Shown: positions 2,916 through 28,511, counted from the stretch's first letter. The stretch: DNA of 64,000 bases from IMGVR_UViG_3300041402_000314:1-64000; one strand, 5' to 3'. Notes: a model not told the origin generated them from the letters alone. Translations and numbers: made by a program.

Positions 2916-2989
2916 TGGAGCTGGCGATGAGATTTGAACTCACATATCAAGGGTTGCAGCCAAGCACCTAGCCATTCGGACACACCAGC
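2916..2989 (-). tRNA. tRNA-Cys(GCA)
   Basis: Cloverleaf; loop CTGCAAC; U73; encoded CCA. Confidence 0.9.
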
Positions 2990-5245: not shown

Positions 5246-5320
5246 TGGTAGGTGAGGTAGGATTCGAACCTACAATCATATCCTTATGAAAGATACAAGG
5301 CTGACCACAACCACACACCC
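5246..5320 (-). tRNA. tRNA-Met/Ile2(CAT), non-initiator
   Basis: TATCT-TTCATAA-GGATA anticodon arm, TTCGAAT T-loop, CCA; atypical D-arm. Confidence 0.75.
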
Positions 5321-5507: not shown

Positions 5508-5579
5508 TGGGAGCGAGGCCAGAAATCGAATCTGGGAATTCGGGATATGAACCCAAATGGAATACCAACTCTCCTCGCG
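5508..5579 (-). tRNA. initiator-like tRNA-fMet(CAT)
   Basis: GGG/CCC in anticodon stem, C1 mismatch, loop TTCATAT, CCA; short D-loop. Confidence 0.75.
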
Positions 5580-5677: not shown

Positions 5678-5822
5678 TGGTGTGAGTAGGGGGAATTAAA
5701 CCCATCATGCAACTACTAAGAGTGATCAAGCTCCTTTCGCCAACCTCCCTGCTTCGTCGCGAGAGCGCACATTGTATATGTCTCCCATTGTATCCACAGT
5801 GTACTACCTGTACTTTACCCAC
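5678..5822 (-). ncRNA. 145 nt tRNA-like RNA with ~70 nt insertion replacing the anticodon arm
   Basis: GTGGGTA/TACTCAC-A-CCA acceptor, GTAC-AGGTA-GTAC D-like arm, degenerate GGG-TTTAATT-CCC T-arm; no 7 nt anticodon loop found. Confidence 0.55.
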
Positions 5823-5928
5823 ACATTTATTTTAATGGGCGGTAAGTCTTGGCTCTTAACCGATGGCATATTCATACCTCCTCTTTAAAGTTGGTTGCAA
5901 ATGCACTTACCGCCCGATTTTATTTTTG

Positions 5929-6001
5929 TGCGTCTGGTGGGAGTCGAACCCACTACCGTTGGTTTTAGAAACCACGACTCTAGCCGTTGAGTTACAGACG
6001 C
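5929..6001 (-). tRNA. amber suppressor tRNA(CTA)
   Basis: Canonical spacing GCGTCTG-TA-ACTC-AACGGCTA-GAGT-C-GTGGT-TTCTAAA-ACCAA-CGGTA-GTGGG-TTCGACT-CCCAC-CAGACGC-A places CTA at positions 34-36; CCA not fully encoded. Confidence 0.85.
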
Positions 6002-6008
6002 GAACTAA

Positions 6009-6302
6009 TTAAATTAATCTCATACTCTTAAAATGATCATTGTTTCCAAGACTAGCTATAGCAGTCATTTGATCGCCTATATCAGGCTCTCTGAAACTTA
6101 TGTGACATATTCTATCACACTCCAACTTCTTTGTCAAGCTAATTAATTCGTTCTCGTCTCTAATACTTAAATAGACTAGGGTTCCGTTATCCCAATCAGT
6201 GTCGCGGTTGCGAAGGACATACTCAGCTAAAGCATGACCTCCCTGTACCGCCTGTTGGGATTTACTTAAGTCCTTACGCACCACAACATACAGCTTCTTC
6301 AT
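6009..6302 (-). CDS. peptidyl-tRNA hydrolase type 2-like protein
   Basis: KLYVVVRKDL..QQAVQGGHA and FREPDIGDQMTAIA match the phage Pth2-like family. Confidence 0.8.
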   Translation of the reverse strand: MKKLYVVVRKDLSKSQQAVQGGHALAEYVLRNRDTDWDNGTLVYLSIRDENELISLTKKLECDRICHISFREPDIGDQMTAIASLGNNDHFKSMRLI

Positions 6303-6579
6303 TTACTACCTCCCTTGGCTCTATGCTCATCTTTATTTGATTAACATAGGTCATGTTTGGAGCATTACCATTCCGAATATCAGATTCAATTTCTTCCATT
6401 GATCTACCTCTCAGAAGGCAATAAGCTATATGGTGATGCCTAGCTTCGTATCTAAGCCTCAGAAGACCTTCTACGTAGCCATATTCAGACCCTTTTCTGA
6501 GTCCTTTCTTTTCTTTGATCTCTTTAGCGAGACCTTTAATATGTTGCTTTAATTCTATAAATTTCATGTTGTTCTCCAT
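6274..6579 (-). CDS. conserved phage hypothetical protein
   Basis: EARHHHIAYCLLRGRSMEEIE; directly upstream of the Pth2-like gene. Confidence 0.65.
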   Translation of the reverse strand: MENNMKFIELKQHIKGLAKEIKEKKGLRKGSEYGYVEGLLRLRYEARHHHIAYCLLRGRSMEEIESDIRNGNAPNMTYVNQIKMSIEPREVVNEEAVCCGA

Positions 6580-7186: not shown

Positions 7187-7262
7187 TGGTAGCGAAGATC
7201 GGATTCGAACCGATGATTCTCGCCTTATGAGGACGATGAGATGACCACTTCTCTACTTCGCG
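7187..7262 (-). tRNA. tRNA(CAT) with initiator-like C1:U72 acceptor
   Basis: CGCGAAG/CTTCGCT-A-CCA; loop CTCATAA; anticodon stem lacks the three G:C pairs of fMet tRNA. Confidence 0.85.
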
Positions 7263-17605: not shown

Positions 17606-17680
17606 TGGTGAGGCCACTCGGAACTGCCCCGAGATTGACTGGTTAAAAGCCAGATATTCTTCTAGTTGAATTATAGCCCC
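17606..17680 (-). tRNA. tRNA-Lys(TTT)
   Basis: Loop CTTTTAA; non-canonical T-loop GGCAGTT; CCA. Confidence 0.88.
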
Positions 17681-17692
17681 ATTAATTTATAT

Positions 17693-17779
17693 TGGTGGGA
17701 TTGGAAGGATTTGAACCTTCGATGCATCTCTGCGTTCGGTTATGAGCCGAGTGCCTTAACCAGACTAGGCAACAATCCC
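17693..17779 (-). tRNA. tRNA(CAT) Met/Ile2 with long variable arm
   Basis: Loop CTCATAA; extra GCA-GAGA-TGC arm; GGGATTG/CAATCCC-A-CCA. Confidence 0.87.
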
Positions 17780-18349: not shown

Positions 18350-18427
18350 TGGTACACCTACGGGGTACTGACCCCCCCCGATCTCCAACGTGAAAGGCTG
18401 GCGAATTGTCCACTATTCGATAGGTGT
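18350..18427 (-). tRNA. tRNA-Glu(TTC) with disrupted T-loop
   Basis: CCAGC-CTTTCAC-GTTGG; T-arm reads CGGGG-GGGGTCAGTA-CCCCG (G8 run); 5' end overlapped by the endonuclease CDS. Confidence 0.7.
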
Positions 18428-19312
18428 ATAATCTTTTCTCTGATAATATTCTACTTCTGGATGGTATTTTTTAATCCATCTCTTAGTTTGTGTATGGCTT
18501 AATTCCCATATATCAGCTACTTGCTGTAACCATCCGAATTTATTTTTATCGACAGATTCTAAAGTTTTTCCTCTTTTACCTATAATTTTTTGGGTCGCTT
18601 TCTGTCTCTTTTCCTTTTCTCTTTTAACCTCTAGTACCTTCTTCTCTTTTCCTGTTAGAAGTTCACAAGTTTTACTAACCTCATTGATATCACCAATAAA
18701 CTGTTCTAAATCTATTATGATAGAGTTAACATCACTCAATACCTGTTTTGCCTTAACTCTATAGACTCTCCAACCTTGAGTTATTAGAAGAGTATCTTTT
18801 TTATCGTCACTAGCTTTTCTCTCAGGTTGTTCATGTTGCCCACCATCTATTTCAACTGCTACTTTAACATTCTCGAAAGCAAAATCTACAAAATATGGAT
18901 AGAAGCTTTTCTCTCTAGTTATTTCAAACTTATCATACCATCCATGTCTTTTCACCGCATTAATAAATACCTTTTCAGGCCAACTCATTTCATTACCAGT
19001 TCGCCAAGCTGTACAACTAGGATTCGCTTTCATATATGCGAGTCGCTTTTTTCTTATTTTCTCTCTAGTCTCTTCCGAAACAGATTTCCGATCTAATAAC
19101 GTTTCGATACACTTCTTATCACCACAACTCTTCTGGAAGGATATGGATTTTCTTAATTTAGCGTCTTTCCCACATACTTCACATTTCGGGATTAAAAATT
19201 TTTTATGAACAATAACATATTCTAATAGAGAAATATCATGTTGATTTTTTAAATGAATACTTAATCCTAAGTTTGATTTAGTCTTTTTATTACATATTTT
19301 ACATTCTTCCAT
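18413..19312 (-). CDS. DUF559/Vsr-like (PD-D/ExK) endonuclease with N-terminal zinc fingers
   Basis: CKIC..HLKNQH, CEVC, YFVDFAFENVKVAVEIDGGQH, DKKDTLLITQGWRVYR. Confidence 0.85.
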   Translation of the reverse strand: MEECKICNKKTKSNLGLSIHLKNQHDISLLEYVIVHKKFLIPKCEVCGKDAKLRKSISFQKSCGDKKCIETLLDRKSVSEETREKIRKKRLAYMKANPSCTAWRTGNEMSWPEKVFINAVKRHGWYDKFEITREKSFYPYFVDFAFENVKVAVEIDGGQHEQPERKASDDKKDTLLITQGWRVYRVKAKQVLSDVNSIIIDLEQFIGDINEVSKTCELLTGKEKKVLEVKREKEKRQKATQKIIGKRGKTLESVDKNKFGWLQQVADIWELSHTQTKRWIKKYHPEVEYYQRKDYTPIE

Positions 19313-20402: not shown

Positions 20403-20476
20403 TGGTACTCCCTGATGGTACTGCCCCACCGCTTATTGGATGTAAACCAATCGCACTACTATTATACTAAGGGAGC
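20403..20476 (-). tRNA. tRNA-Val(TAC)
   Basis: ATTGG-TTTACAT-CCAAT; T-loop GGCAGTA; CCA. Confidence 0.87.
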
Positions 20477-25018: not shown

Positions 25019-25114
25019 TGGAGGAGAGGAGGAGATTTGAACTCCCATCGGAACCCGAAGACCCCGAATACGCTTTTCAAGAGCGTTCGACTATTCCCCA
25101 CTGTCAACCTCTCC
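25019..25114 (-). tRNA. tRNA-Ser(TGA)
   Basis: ACGCT-CTTGAAA-AGCGT, long TTCG-capped variable arm, U73 discriminator (G is usual for Ser), CCA. Confidence 0.85.
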
Positions 25115-26199: not shown

Positions 26200-26285
26200 T
26201 GGTGGGTATGGAATGATTCGAACATTCTCAGCCTAAGACAGTGGATTTACAGTCCACTTCAGCTCTCCAACTCTGACGCATACCC
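26200..26285 (-). tRNA. tRNA-Tyr(GTA)
   Basis: GTGGA-CTGTAAA-TCCAC, variable arm, A73, CCA. Confidence 0.92.
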
Positions 26286-27452: not shown

Positions 27453-28511
27453 TTACATTTGTTCTTGTTGGAAGAAATAATCTCTTACTACCTTAGAGAC
27501 TTTGTTGTTTACTTCCTTGACATCCAGACCAGCATCGGTAATGATGTCGAGGTCTTCCTTTACGATATCACCAATAACCCATCTGATGAAATCTCCCATT
27601 CCTTTACGATCTATCTCTCCGCCATTCAGAGTATCGAATGTTTCCTGTATGCCTTGCTCCATACGGAAAGCAGGAGTAATCTTATTTACCACTTCATTAA
27701 CAAGATTCATTTTAGCTTCGTCTACTTTAGGCAGCTTCTTTACTTTACTGGTAGAATGCTTTTCTCCCTTGACCTTAAAGCGAAAGTCATTGCCGTTAAA
27801 AACGCCTTTCCAGACCACACCCTCACCAACACCTTCATTTCCTAATTGGAAGGCCACAGGGCATCTTTCCTCGACTTCCAAAGTGATTTCATTCAACTTA
27901 TTCTGAAAAGCCTCTGGTTTATTGAAATCTATTTTTATTTCGAAGGTAGGAAATTCATCTATAAAGTAAATGTTATGATCATTAATTTTACTACCTCTAT
28001 TATTCGGACATACTTTACTTAAGTCTAACCAGAATCCATCTTCTTCATCATCATGAGACGTTATCTTAACATCGAAGATAACGAACATCTTATCAAGCCC
28101 ATTGACCCCAACACCTTTCTGAATAGACCCACCGCTGACTTCCCCGAAAATAGAAATGATGTTATTAATAGTATCGATATTAAAATCCTTAATTATTTCA
28201 GCTACGATATTATTGAATGAAACTTTTCTCGCATGTACGAAACAAGAAAACCCACAATTATCTTTTTCTGGGGTGATGATATTTTTCCTAGATTGCGTCC
28301 AAATACCACTTTCAGCATTAAAGCATACTGCACCATTACTTCCATGAATTTTAGTGGTTCCTGTTAATTTCAGAACTGGTTTCGGTCTCATCCCATCATA
28401 TACGGGTTCACCATCTTCTCCTATTCCTACAAAACTAGCAGAATGGCTTATATGTTTAACAATATTTCTATACTGTTCTATACTTGGGTACTTAATAAAC
28501 TTCTTTTCCAT
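27453..28511 (-). CDS. ATP-dependent RNA ligase (Rnl2-like)
   Basis: KYPSI, TKIHGSN (motif I KxxG), IFGEV, VIFDV, GEGVVW, FKVKGEKH. Confidence 0.88.
   Translation of the reverse strand: MEKKFIKYPSIEQYRNIVKHISHSASFVGIGEDGEPVYDGMRPKPVLKLTGTTKIHGSNGAVCFNAESGIWTQSRKNIITPEKDNCGFSCFVHARKVSFNNIVAEIIKDFNIDTINNIISIFGEVSGGSIQKGVGVNGLDKMFVIFDVKITSHDDEEDGFWLDLSKVCPNNRGSKINDHNIYFIDEFPTFEIKIDFNKPEAFQNKLNEITLEVEERCPVAFQLGNEGVGEGVVWKGVFNGNDFRFKVKGEKHSTSKVKKLPKVDEAKMNLVNEVVNKITPAFRMEQGIQETFDTLNGGEIDRKGMGDFIRWVIGDIVKEDLDIITDAGLDVKEVNNKVSKVVRDYFFQQEQM

What the first reader, a model, noticed from the sequence alone, without database searches (positions are those of the whole stretch)
5929..6001. Amber (UAG) suppressor tRNA in a genome segment that otherwise reads in the standard code
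Seen: all arm lengths are canonical and put CUA at positions 34-36; the alternative Arg(UCU) register destroys the anticodon stem. It is the only canonical tRNA here without an encoded CCA. Seen: the long genes in this window are intact in code 11, and DNA polymerase ends at TAG after a normal MEEFF terminus. Established: stop-codon-recoded phages carry such tRNAs and often confine recoding to late/lysis genes. Inference: either conditional amber read-through (for example late genes outside this window) or an early stage of recoding. The Pth2-like gene is immediately upstream in the same transcript.
Basis: partly seen in the sequence, partly recalled or inferred. Interest (0 to 1): 0.75.

Follow-up and report, generated by a model that had tools for sequence, protein, structure and literature searches.

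The report
Amber suppressor tRNA with hydrolase partner
The tRNA that reads the UAG stop codon is real, and it belongs to a three-part cassette (small helical protein, peptidyl-tRNA-hydrolase-like protein, tRNA) found in many large phages that otherwise use the standard genetic code. In about one cassette in six, the hydrolase-like gene itself contains a UAG.

Summary
A canonical tRNA with anticodon CUA lies on the minus strand at 5929-6001 (Rfam 59.8 bits). It is the only tRNA in the array without an encoded CCA. The 204-kb T4-like genome (marine sediment, 89% complete) reads in code 11: no gene needs TAG as sense, and capsid and terminase genes outside the window are intact.

The tRNA is not a stray. 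The 97-aa gene 7 nt upstream (ORF-B) has a PTH2 fold. It belongs to a phage family of about 940 clusters.
- Of 87 distinct family members fetched, 72 (83%) have a tRNA(CUA) nearby, always on the same strand. In 44 it lies within 50 nt downstream.
- A ~100-aa helical protein (ORF-A) precedes ORF-B in 69 of 88 loci, and natural A-B fusions exist.
- The 69 tRNAs vary widely, with compensatory changes in every stem, but CUA is invariant.
- Fourteen ORF-B genes carry one in-frame TAG, none a TAA or TGA. Five of their phages were sampled and look standard-code.

So UAG is translated by this cassette, and the hydrolase-like partner is functionally tied to the tRNA. I found no paper describing this link. 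The inserted amino acid, the hydrolase's substrate and the benefit to the phage remain inferred.

The parts
5929..6001 (-). tRNA with anticodon CUA (amber suppressor type). Type I, discriminator A73, G27.A43 mismatch.
   Evidence: ARAGORN. Rfam RF00005 at 59.8 bits, with an alignment that places CUA at 34-36. In 69 orthologs all 21 stem pairs show compensatory changes and CUA is invariant.
5921..5928 (-). 3' trailer CAAAAATA: no encoded CCA, unlike every other tRNA in the array.
   Evidence: The genome encodes a CCA-adding enzyme outside the window, at genome 69383-69754.
6009..6302 (-). ORF-B, 97 aa, PTH2-fold (peptidyl-tRNA hydrolase 2-like) protein. Stop TAA, 7 nt before the tRNA.
   Evidence: PF01981 at 25.2 bits. 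The family profile hits M. jannaschii Pth2 (2zv3) at E 1.7e-5. AF2 model pLDDT 92.7; the top 15 Foldseek PDB hits are all PTH2-fold or PTH2-like entries, the best 14 with TM 0.69-0.80 by query. Family size is 938 clusters at E<=1e-10.
6274..6579 (-). ORF-A, 101 aa, basic helical protein with motif RHxHIAYCxLRGRxxEQIE. It overlaps the ORF-B start by 29 nt in another frame.
   Evidence: Found directly upstream of ORF-B in 69 of 88 loci. Alignment A4. AF2 pLDDT 85 with no significant structural match. Natural ORF-A::ORF-B fusion proteins exist.
6109..6137 (-). Sigma-70-like promoter TTGACA-17-TAGAAT with TG extension, inside ORF-B about 100 nt upstream of the tRNA. It is a consensus match only.
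   Evidence: 11 of 12 matches. The overall number of promoter-like sites in the region is not above the shuffles.

Best explanation
The tRNA is a working UAG-decoding (amber suppressor) tRNA. It is the RNA component of a conserved, horizontally spread phage cassette: ORF-A (small basic helical protein), ORF-B (PTH2-fold protein) and tRNA(CUA).

Proposed mechanism. After 3' trimming and CCA addition (the phage has its own CCA-adding enzyme), a host synthetase charges the tRNA, probably through the U35-containing anticodon. The tRNA then competes with release factor 1 at UAG and inserts an amino acid. The ORF-A/ORF-B pair works as one unit on the ester bond of a tRNA-linked product that exists because of suppression. 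That product could be peptidyl-tRNA or blocked or free aminoacyl-tRNA(CUA). The pair thereby buffers or limits read-through. In one family member in six, ORF-B itself contains a UAG, so its synthesis is proportional to suppressor activity. This would be a feedback or sensor arrangement analogous to the in-frame UGA of prfB.

In this phage ORF-B has no TAG and no gene needs TAG as sense. The tRNA can therefore act only on genuine UAG stops: about 44 phage genes, which gain a median of 6 extra codons, and host or competitor mRNAs.

Shown: the tRNA structure and CUA, the cassette linkage, the ORF-A/B coupling, the PTH2 fold, TAG-only interruptions of ORF-B, and standard code elsewhere.

Inferred: charging and the inserted residue, ORF-B's substrate, the direction of the feedback, and the benefit to the phage.
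For: tRNA quality and register.

Selection on the tRNA: 69 distinct orthologs, compensatory changes at all 21 pairs, CUA invariant, U33 and A37 at least 90% conserved. Acceptor stems and the discriminator vary.

Linkage:
- 87 distinct ORF-B sequences were fetched. 72 have a tRNA(CUA) in the held flanks, all on the same strand, 44 within 50 nt downstream (first seen).
- The link is replicated in MAG contigs from the GTDB genome collection, 5 of 8.
- It is also seen in cultured phages Cane17 and ME3.
- Control: 340 kb elsewhere in five of these phages hold 14 tRNAs, none CUA.

UAG is translated: 14 ORF-B genes have one in-frame TAG at 10 or more different columns, with homology continuing through the conserved FxEPD...TA motif. 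None has TAA or TGA. A binomial test gives p about 2e-7.

These phages are not recoded overall: ORF cover, capsid and terminase genes without stops, and no excess of TAG-interrupted genes.

ORF-A/B coupling: conserved overlap and natural fusions.

PTH2 fold.

Own genome: code 11, CCA-adding enzyme present, no release factor gene.
Against: - There is no expression, charging or read-through data. Only DNA metagenome runs hold the sequence.
- This phage's own ORF-B has no TAG, so translation of UAG is shown for relatives, not for this genome.
- ORF-B lacks a clear equivalent of the Lys of the Pth2 'GKGK' stretch, and its loop after the acidic motif is shorter. Hydrolase activity is therefore uncertain.
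- TAG stops in this genome are not followed by earlier back-up stops than TAA or TGA stops. TAG is under-used as a stop but still ends about 12% of genes. This sits awkwardly with strong suppression.
- 15 of 87 loci show no tRNA(CUA) in the flanks held.
- The tests for other TAG-containing genes have limited power for short or fast-evolving genes. The record is 89% complete.
Confidence: 0.6

Rival explanations
1. Early or partial recoding. The tRNA exists to decode sense TAG codons in a few of this phage's own genes, for example lysis genes. These genes would lie in the missing 11% of the genome or be too short or divergent for my scans.
For: Published model: suppressor tRNA acquisition precedes recoding, and recoding concentrates in late and lysis genes (bioRxiv 10.1101/2021.08.26.457843). 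TAG is the rarest stop here. The record is 89% complete. Some family members sit in loci that do look TAG-recoded (L092-98 group, L080-83, L063).
Against: No TAG-interrupted gene turned up in 204 kb. Capsid and terminase genes are intact. In relatives with a proven sense TAG, that codon is in ORF-B while sampled late genes are clean.
Confidence: 0.12
2. Weapon rather than housekeeping. The suppressor is made to corrupt termination of host UAG-terminated genes, for example defence or mobile-element genes. Alternatively it could trigger premature expression of TAG-gated late genes of co-infecting recoded phages. The PTH2-like pair would protect the phage's own translation from the side effects. 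This concerns the purpose and is compatible with the best explanation's mechanism.
For: The cassette is kept in many standard-code phages that have no sense TAG of their own. It sits in the early/tRNA region. Phage tmRNA genes lie beside it in several relatives. Borges et al. raise sensing of co-infecting phages through suppressor tRNAs.
Against: There is no direct evidence. The host is unknown (marine sediment metagenome), so host TAG use cannot be examined.
Confidence: 0.15
3. Selfish or neutral passenger. The cassette spreads horizontally among tRNA-rich phages, perhaps with homing endonucleases, and does nothing useful for this phage.
For: The distribution is patchy across unrelated large phages: T4-like, jumbo, Lak, mycobacteriophages. 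HNH endonuclease genes lie just upstream in close relatives. This copy has lost its CCA.
Against: CUA, the loop and all stems are under clear purifying selection over deep divergence. ORF-B has 14 invariant columns among 28 diverse sequences. A sense TAG in ORF-B requires a working tRNA.
Confidence: 0.1
4. Not a suppressor at all: a mis-registered tRNA-Arg(UCU), a tRNA pseudogene, a pyrrolysine tRNA, or a tRNA-like decoy.
For: ARAGORN prints 'tRNA-Pyl'. A tRNA-Arg(UCU) lies 260 nt downstream. CCA is missing. There is one mismatch in the anticodon stem.
Against: The covariance model fixes CUA at 34-36. 69 orthologs keep CUA. D loop, T loop, the 5-bp anticodon stem and the 5-nt variable loop are canonical, unlike what I recall of tRNA-Pyl. 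In-frame TAGs in ORF-B show that UAG is decoded with an amino acid.
Confidence: 0.03

Closest known systems
Suppressor tRNAs and 'code change modules' of stop-codon-recoded phages (crAss-like, Lak, Jade; Borges et al., bioRxiv 10.1101/2021.08.26.457843)
   Same: A phage-encoded tRNA(CUA) competes with host RF1 and sits beside translation-related genes. The closest phage tRNA by blastn is the Sup-CTA of code-15 phage Phass-1, 85% identical over 53 nt.
   Different: [quoted passage not shown] Here the genome is standard-code. The partner is a PTH2-fold protein plus ORF-A. The only gene seen to carry a sense TAG (in relatives) is that partner. The acceptor stem here (G1-C72, A73) differs from the Gln-like U1/G73 stem of the Phass-1 tRNA.
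CUA tRNAs of standard-code jumbo phage XacN1 (PMC5852040)
   Same: Amber suppressor tRNAs occur in a phage whose genes do not need them, and the authors found no target. XacN1 also encodes an ORF-B homolog.
   Different: In XacN1 the tRNAs lie in the terminal repeats, far from the homolog, which is the C-terminal domain of a 279-aa protein. The paper draws no link between the two.
Archaeal/eukaryotic peptidyl-tRNA hydrolase 2 (Pth2, PF01981; e.g. PDB 2zv3, 1xty, 1q7s)
   Same: Same fold, TM 0.74-0.80. Shared N-terminal strand and the AQGGHA / AVQGGHA helix motif, with an acidic residue aligned to the Asp of the DAGHT motif.
   Different: About 20 residues shorter, only 17-24% identical, and barely above the Pfam threshold. 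The loop after the acidic motif is deleted and the Gly-Lys-Gly-Lys stretch is replaced by K-S-Q-Q. It is phage-specific: only 8 loci in 185,579 prokaryote genomes against at least 475 in IMG/VR. It is paired or fused with ORF-A.
prfB (RF2) autoregulation by an in-frame UGA
   Same: A gene for a factor that acts at a stop codon contains that stop codon in frame, so its output reports how that codon is being decoded (general knowledge; PMC12421855 is listed).
   Different: prfB is read through by a +1 frameshift, and the arrangement is fixed at one site. Here the codon is decoded by a neighbouring tRNA, occurs at many different sites, and is present in only about 16% of members. This is an analogy, not homology.
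tRNA arrays of cluster C mycobacteriophages (Morgado & Vicente 2018, PMC5966550)
   Same: These arrays hold a PTH2-like gene and a tRNA that ARAGORN labels by its unusual anticodon. In Cane17 the PTH2-like gene is followed 250 nt later by tRNA(CUA).
   Different: The paper lists both as array content without connecting them. ORF-A is not detectable there.

Membership tests
tRNA (Rfam RF00005) | Cloverleaf scoring above the curated gathering score | tested here: met
   59.8 bits against 29, full-length model match 1-71.
Amber suppressor tRNA | Anticodon CUA at positions 34-36 in a 7-nt loop, with U33 and a purine at 37 | tested here: met
   Loop UUCUAAA. CUA is invariant in 69 orthologs.
Amber suppressor tRNA | UAG is actually translated as an amino acid | tested here: inconclusive
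   Met indirectly for the family: 14 neighbouring ORF-B genes have one in-frame TAG and never TAA or TGA, with homology continuing. No sense TAG exists in this genome, and there are no expression data.
Amber suppressor tRNA | Aminoacylation and identity of the inserted residue | not testable with these tools
   Discriminators and acceptor stems vary among orthologs. The TAG sites lie at variable columns, one of them at the invariant Trp column in L090. No isotype model is available here.
Pyrrolysine tRNA | Atypical cloverleaf as I recall it: 6-bp anticodon stem, 3-nt variable loop, small D loop without GG, no T-psi-C sequence | tested here: not met
   5-bp anticodon stem, 5-nt variable loop, D loop AACGGCUA with GG, T loop UUCGACU. 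The defining features are from memory.
Stop-codon-recoded (code 15) phage | Many genes with in-frame TAG; coding density rises when TAG is read as sense | tested here: not met
PTH2 (PF01981) for ORF-B | Sequence match above the Pfam gathering score | tested here: met
   25.2 bits against 23, marginal. The family profile against PDB Pth2 gives E 1.7e-5.
PTH2 (PF01981) for ORF-B | PTH2 alpha/beta fold | tested here: met
   pLDDT 92.7. The top 15 Foldseek PDB hits are all PTH2-fold or PTH2-like entries; the best 14 have TM 0.69-0.80 by query.
PTH2 (PF01981) for ORF-B | Catalytic residues and peptidyl-tRNA esterase activity | tested here: inconclusive
   The QGGHA motif and an acidic residue (invariant E72, D74 at least 90%) are kept. 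The Lys-rich stretch and a loop are changed. Activity needs an assay.
Theta (HDV-like) ribozyme-processed phage tRNA | Self-cleaving ribozyme directly 3' of a CCA-less tRNA (PMC10879173) | tested here: inconclusive
   No ribozyme family matched 5850-6080 even at E<=1. I do not know whether Rfam 15 holds a theta model.

The most novel reading that the evidence does not exclude
The cassette is a self-contained, self-regulating amber read-through device. A PTH2-derived enzyme, with its ORF-A partner, acts specifically on the suppressor tRNA's acylated or peptidyl form. In many lineages this enzyme is gated by its own UAG. The result would be a set level of stop-codon read-through in cells that use the standard code, and the cassette would be the portable seed from which full TAG recoding in phages repeatedly evolves.
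Probability: 0.3. Interest if true: 0.85.

Novelty: new variant of a known kind. Interest (0 to 1): 0.72.

Why it matters
Suppressor tRNAs in phages that do not need them have been reported as an unexplained oddity (for example XacN1). The origin of stop-codon recoding in phages is an open question. This finding has four consequences.
- The amber tRNA travels with a dedicated protein partner of the peptidyl-tRNA-hydrolase fold. That points to a concrete biochemical activity that can be tested.
- The first gene to take up a sense UAG is the tRNA's own neighbour, in otherwise standard-code genomes. That is a snapshot of how a codon can begin to be reassigned, or be used as a private regulatory codon.
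- Culturable phages carry the cassette (Bixzunavirus mycobacteriophages, Acinetobacter phage ME3), so genetics is possible.
- A naturally regulated suppressor module could also interest genetic-code-expansion work.

Tried and rejected
- Close DNA relatives in GenBank phages: none. An exact anticodon-arm/T-arm pattern in IMG/VR: none.
- Amino acid identity from sequence similarity. The tRNA resembles Phass-1 Sup-CTA, Lak tRNAs (UAU/AUU) and mycobacteriophage tRNA-Trp mostly in generic arms. It is not close to any of the phage's own tRNAs. Not conclusive.
- Identity from residues aligned to the in-frame TAGs. The sites are variable columns (P/N/R/D/K, G/A/K/S, K/R and others); one site is at the invariant Trp. 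Not conclusive.
- Read-through fusions in this genome. Seven TAG stops are followed by long in-frame ORFs. In the six that look coding, an ATG follows within 0-4 codons; the seventh extension scores as non-coding. The rate equals that for TAA. Rejected.
- Adaptation of TAG stops to suppression through earlier back-up stops or +4 base context. No difference from TAA or TGA.
- ORF-A function. There are no Pfam or PHROG hits. No significant PDB or AlphaFold DB match: the best is an unnamed 'transposase' cluster at TM 0.58, E 0.19, with weak uL29-like hits at E>2. The ESM Atlas gave nothing.
- N-terminal domain of the long XacN1/RAS14 homologs: nothing reliable.
- Expression data: only DNA metagenome runs hold the sequence.
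- The codon-score scan for TAG-interrupted genes recovered only one of the five known ORF-B TAGs. Its negative results are weak.
- Literature searches for a stated link between PTH2-like genes and suppressor tRNAs found none. The held library is not exhaustive.

Full report
**1. The observation.**
ARAGORN finds 28 tRNA genes in the window, all on the minus strand between 5.2 and 26.7 kb. One of them, at 5928-6001, has anticodon CUA. Rfam's tRNA model matches 5929-6001 (-) at 59.8 bits, the third best of 28 matches. The Infernal alignment places UUCUAAA in the 7-nt anticodon loop, so CUA is at 34-36. The 5-bp anticodon stem has one G27.A43 mismatch, D and T loops are canonical, the variable loop is 5 nt and the discriminator is A73. 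The sequence folds better than all 200 shuffles (z -3.9).

The other 27 Rfam matches and the three ARAGORN-only tRNAs are each followed by CCA. This one is followed by CAAAAATA. The 'Pyl' label is only ARAGORN's name for the anticodon; the cloverleaf is ordinary.

**2. The genome.**
The window is the first 64 kb of a single 204,149-bp IMG/VR virus record, estimated 89% complete. GC content is 35%. Its family-B DNA polymerase is about 35% identical to gp43 of T4-like cyanophages. A gp23-like capsid gene and a terminase lie outside the window. Near-identical DNA occurs only in marine-sediment and cold-seep metagenomes, all DNA runs. All tRNAs of the genome lie in the window.

**3. Standard code.**
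- A simple codon-usage gene call gives 379 genes and 89% coding under code 11, with stops TAA 257, TGA 78 and TAG 44.
- Reading TAG as sense raises ORF cover no more than reading TGA as sense.
- In-frame extensions after TAG stops are no longer than after TAA or TGA stops, with medians of 6.5 and 6 codons.
- Seven extensions after TAG stops are long. Six look coding and are separate genes with an ATG 0-4 codons after the TAG. The seventh, after 18413-19312, scores as non-coding.
- A scan for TAGs flanked by coding-like sequence without a nearby start finds none in this genome. That scan is weak.
- Capsid and terminase have no internal stops.
- DNA polymerase ends NMEEFF-TAG.

TAG ends 12.6% of long ORFs but makes up 25% of off-frame stop triplets. 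It is under-used as a stop but far from avoided.

**4. The neighbours.**
The 97-aa gene ending 7 nt upstream of the tRNA (ORF-B, 6009-6302) matches Pfam PTH2 marginally. A profile of the family matches M. jannaschii Pth2 over its whole length at E 1.7e-5. It shares the AQGGHA helix motif, and an acidic residue aligns with the Asp of DAGHT. It lacks the Gly-Lys-Gly-Lys stretch and part of a loop. An AlphaFold model (pLDDT 92.7) has PTH2-fold or PTH2-like proteins as its top 15 PDB matches; the best 14 have TM 0.69-0.80 by query.

A 101-aa gene (ORF-A, 6274-6579) overlaps the ORF-B start by 29 nt. It is a basic helical protein with no recognisable family or fold.

**5. The cassette.**
Fetching relatives of ORF-B changed the picture. 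In the first six IMG/VR loci, four had a tRNA(CUA) immediately after the gene. The same held for contigs from ENA, Logan, JGI and NCBI.

An alignment-based scan found at least 475 relatives in IMG/VR. In the best 80 loci, 71 held a tRNA(CUA).

After removing duplicates and adding eight MAG contigs from the GTDB genome collection, the counts are as follows:
- 87 distinct ORF-B sequences.
- 72 (83%) have a tRNA(CUA) in the few kb held, all 72 on the same strand.
- 44 of those lie within 50 nt downstream.
- CUA accounts for 75 of 304 tRNAs in these loci.

As a control, 340 kb taken elsewhere in five of the same phages hold 14 tRNAs and no CUA.

ORF-A lies directly upstream of ORF-B in 69 of 88 loci. 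Natural single-chain ORF-A::ORF-B proteins of 181-197 aa exist, so the two proteins act together.

The family is large (938 clusters at 50% identity with E<=1e-10). It is essentially phage-borne: 8 loci in 185,579 prokaryote genomes, all of them MAG contigs.

More distant members occur in cultured phages:
- In Mycobacterium phage Cane17 the annotated 'peptidyl tRNA hydrolase' is followed 250 nt later by tRNA(CUA), the first tRNA downstream of that gene.
- In Acinetobacter phage ME3 the tRNA(CUA) is about 450 nt upstream.
- In Lak-A2 a tRNA(UUA) is nearby.
- XacN1, known for two unexplained CUA tRNAs (PMC5852040), has the domain fused in a 279-aa protein.

**6. The tRNA is under selection as an amber reader.**
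The 69 distinct cassette tRNAs differ greatly. Acceptor stems and even the discriminator vary (A>U>G>C), and CCA is encoded in about half. Yet all 21 cloverleaf pairs show compensatory double changes, and C34, U35 and A36 are invariant.

**7. UAG is translated.**
In 14 of the 87 ORF-B genes the reading frame contains exactly one TAG. The TAGs lie at ten or more different alignment columns, mostly in the variable loop before the invariant Trp. The conserved C-terminal motifs continue intact after the TAG. No ORF-B has an internal TAA or TGA (checked with the translate tool). Fourteen of fourteen being TAG has p about 2e-7 if the interruptions were random nonsense mutations. These genes are therefore read through, not dead.

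ORF-A, only 300 nt further from the tRNA, shows at most one such case in 69 (Fisher p 0.002).

Five phages with a TAG in ORF-B were sampled over 60-86 kb each. Long ORFs cover 77-93% of the DNA under code 11, with no special gain from TAG=sense. Their gp23-like capsid and terminase genes have no stops. In these phages the sense TAG looks private to the gene next to the suppressor.

Some other family members do sit in loci that look TAG-recoded, and Lak phages are recoded. The cassette therefore spans both states.

**8. Interpretation.**
*What is shown.* The tRNA is a real, selected amber-decoding tRNA. It is physically and evolutionarily tied to a PTH2-fold protein and its ORF-A partner. In many lineages the partner's synthesis depends on the tRNA.

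*What is inferred.* A gene tolerates, or benefits from, a codon that only the suppressor can read if its product is needed only when, or in proportion as, the suppressor works. Given the fold, the simplest activity is hydrolysis of an ester-linked tRNA species tied to suppression. There are two versions:
- It could recycle peptidyl-tRNA and relieve ribosomes that ran past UAG stops (clean-up). Phage tmRNA genes beside the cassette in several relatives fit this.
- It could deacylate the suppressor itself (negative feedback, like the in-frame UGA of prfB).

I cannot tell these apart. The catalytic constellation differs from Pth2, so activity itself needs testing.

In this phage, with no sense TAG, the tRNA can only extend proteins ending in UAG (its own 44 genes, or host or competitor genes). 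What the phage gains from this is open. The missing CCA is probably no obstacle, because the phage encodes a CCA-adding enzyme at 69.4 kb. It has no release factor gene.

**9. Comparison with the literature.**
Suppressor tRNAs in recoded phages, and occasionally in standard-code relatives, are known. So are 'code change modules' of tRNA plus synthetase plus release factor. Theta ribozymes 3' of CCA-less suppressor tRNAs are also described; none is detectable here.

The PTH2-like gene has been listed among the contents of mycobacteriophage tRNA arrays. I found no paper that links a PTH2-like protein to suppressor tRNAs or reports the self-referential TAG. That search covers only the held library.

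**10. Verdict.**
- The bare fact (an amber tRNA in a standard-code phage) is already known as a phenomenon.
- The conserved ORF-A / PTH2-like / tRNA(CUA) cassette and its private amber codon appear to be a new variant, and one that can be tested.

Noticed in passing
window 5804-5915 (-): Directly 3' of the tRNA, a perfect 11-nt inverted repeat (5837-5847 / 5905-5915, 57-nt loop) encloses a strong ribosome-binding site (AAAGAGGAGG) and a 23-codon ORF (5875 down to 5804) that ends in TAG. This 260-nt spacer between tRNA(CUA) and tRNA-Arg(UCU) is absent in relative L012, where the two tRNAs are 16 nt apart.
   Followed up: partly
window 6109-6137 (-): A near-consensus sigma-70-type promoter with an extended -10 lies inside ORF-B, about 100 nt upstream of the tRNA. 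The tRNA may have its own promoter rather than depend on the ORF-A/B transcript.
   Followed up: no
window 2919-2989, 17609-17680, 20406-20476 (-): Three further tRNA-like genes are found by Rfam (44-45 bits) but not by ARAGORN. Two have an odd T arm (GGGGCAGTTCC / GGGGCAGTACC). All have an encoded CCA. Conversely, three ARAGORN tRNAs (5508-5579, 25019-25114, 26200-26285) are below Rfam's threshold.
   Followed up: no
window 5246-5320, 5508-5579, 7187-7262, 17693-17779 (-): There are four tRNA genes with anticodon CAT. Some may be initiator or lysidine-modified Ile tRNAs rather than elongator Met.
   Followed up: no
L005 2360-2725; L016/L017 815-1437; L129 1094-1421: Phage-encoded tmRNA genes lie within a few kb of the cassette in several relatives. 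This suggests a wider ribosome-rescue theme.
   Followed up: no
L011 8641-9150; L012 1838-2344: HNH homing-endonuclease genes lie about 0.7-1 kb upstream of the cassette in the closest relatives, and also on the P0012 contig. This fits mobility of the tRNA region.
   Followed up: no
L121 2237-2309 (Prevotella phage Lak-A2): Near the Lak ORF-B homolog the neighbouring tRNA has anticodon UUA (ochre type) rather than CUA.
   Followed up: no
G004:C1:28778-29185 and 79188-80267: Two separate DNA polymerase B matches, each with one in-frame TAA. This could be a split or intein-containing polymerase, or two genes.
   Followed up: no
window ~40000: GC skew and AT skew change sign near 40 kb, where the coding strand switches from minus to plus. 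This is a divergent transcription point or a replication-related boundary.
   Followed up: no
window 27453-28511 (-); genome 69383-69754 (+): An RNA ligase (PF09414) and a CCA-adding enzyme are encoded. The same two functions were reported as enriched in phages with theta-ribozyme-processed tRNAs (PMC10879173).
   Followed up: partly
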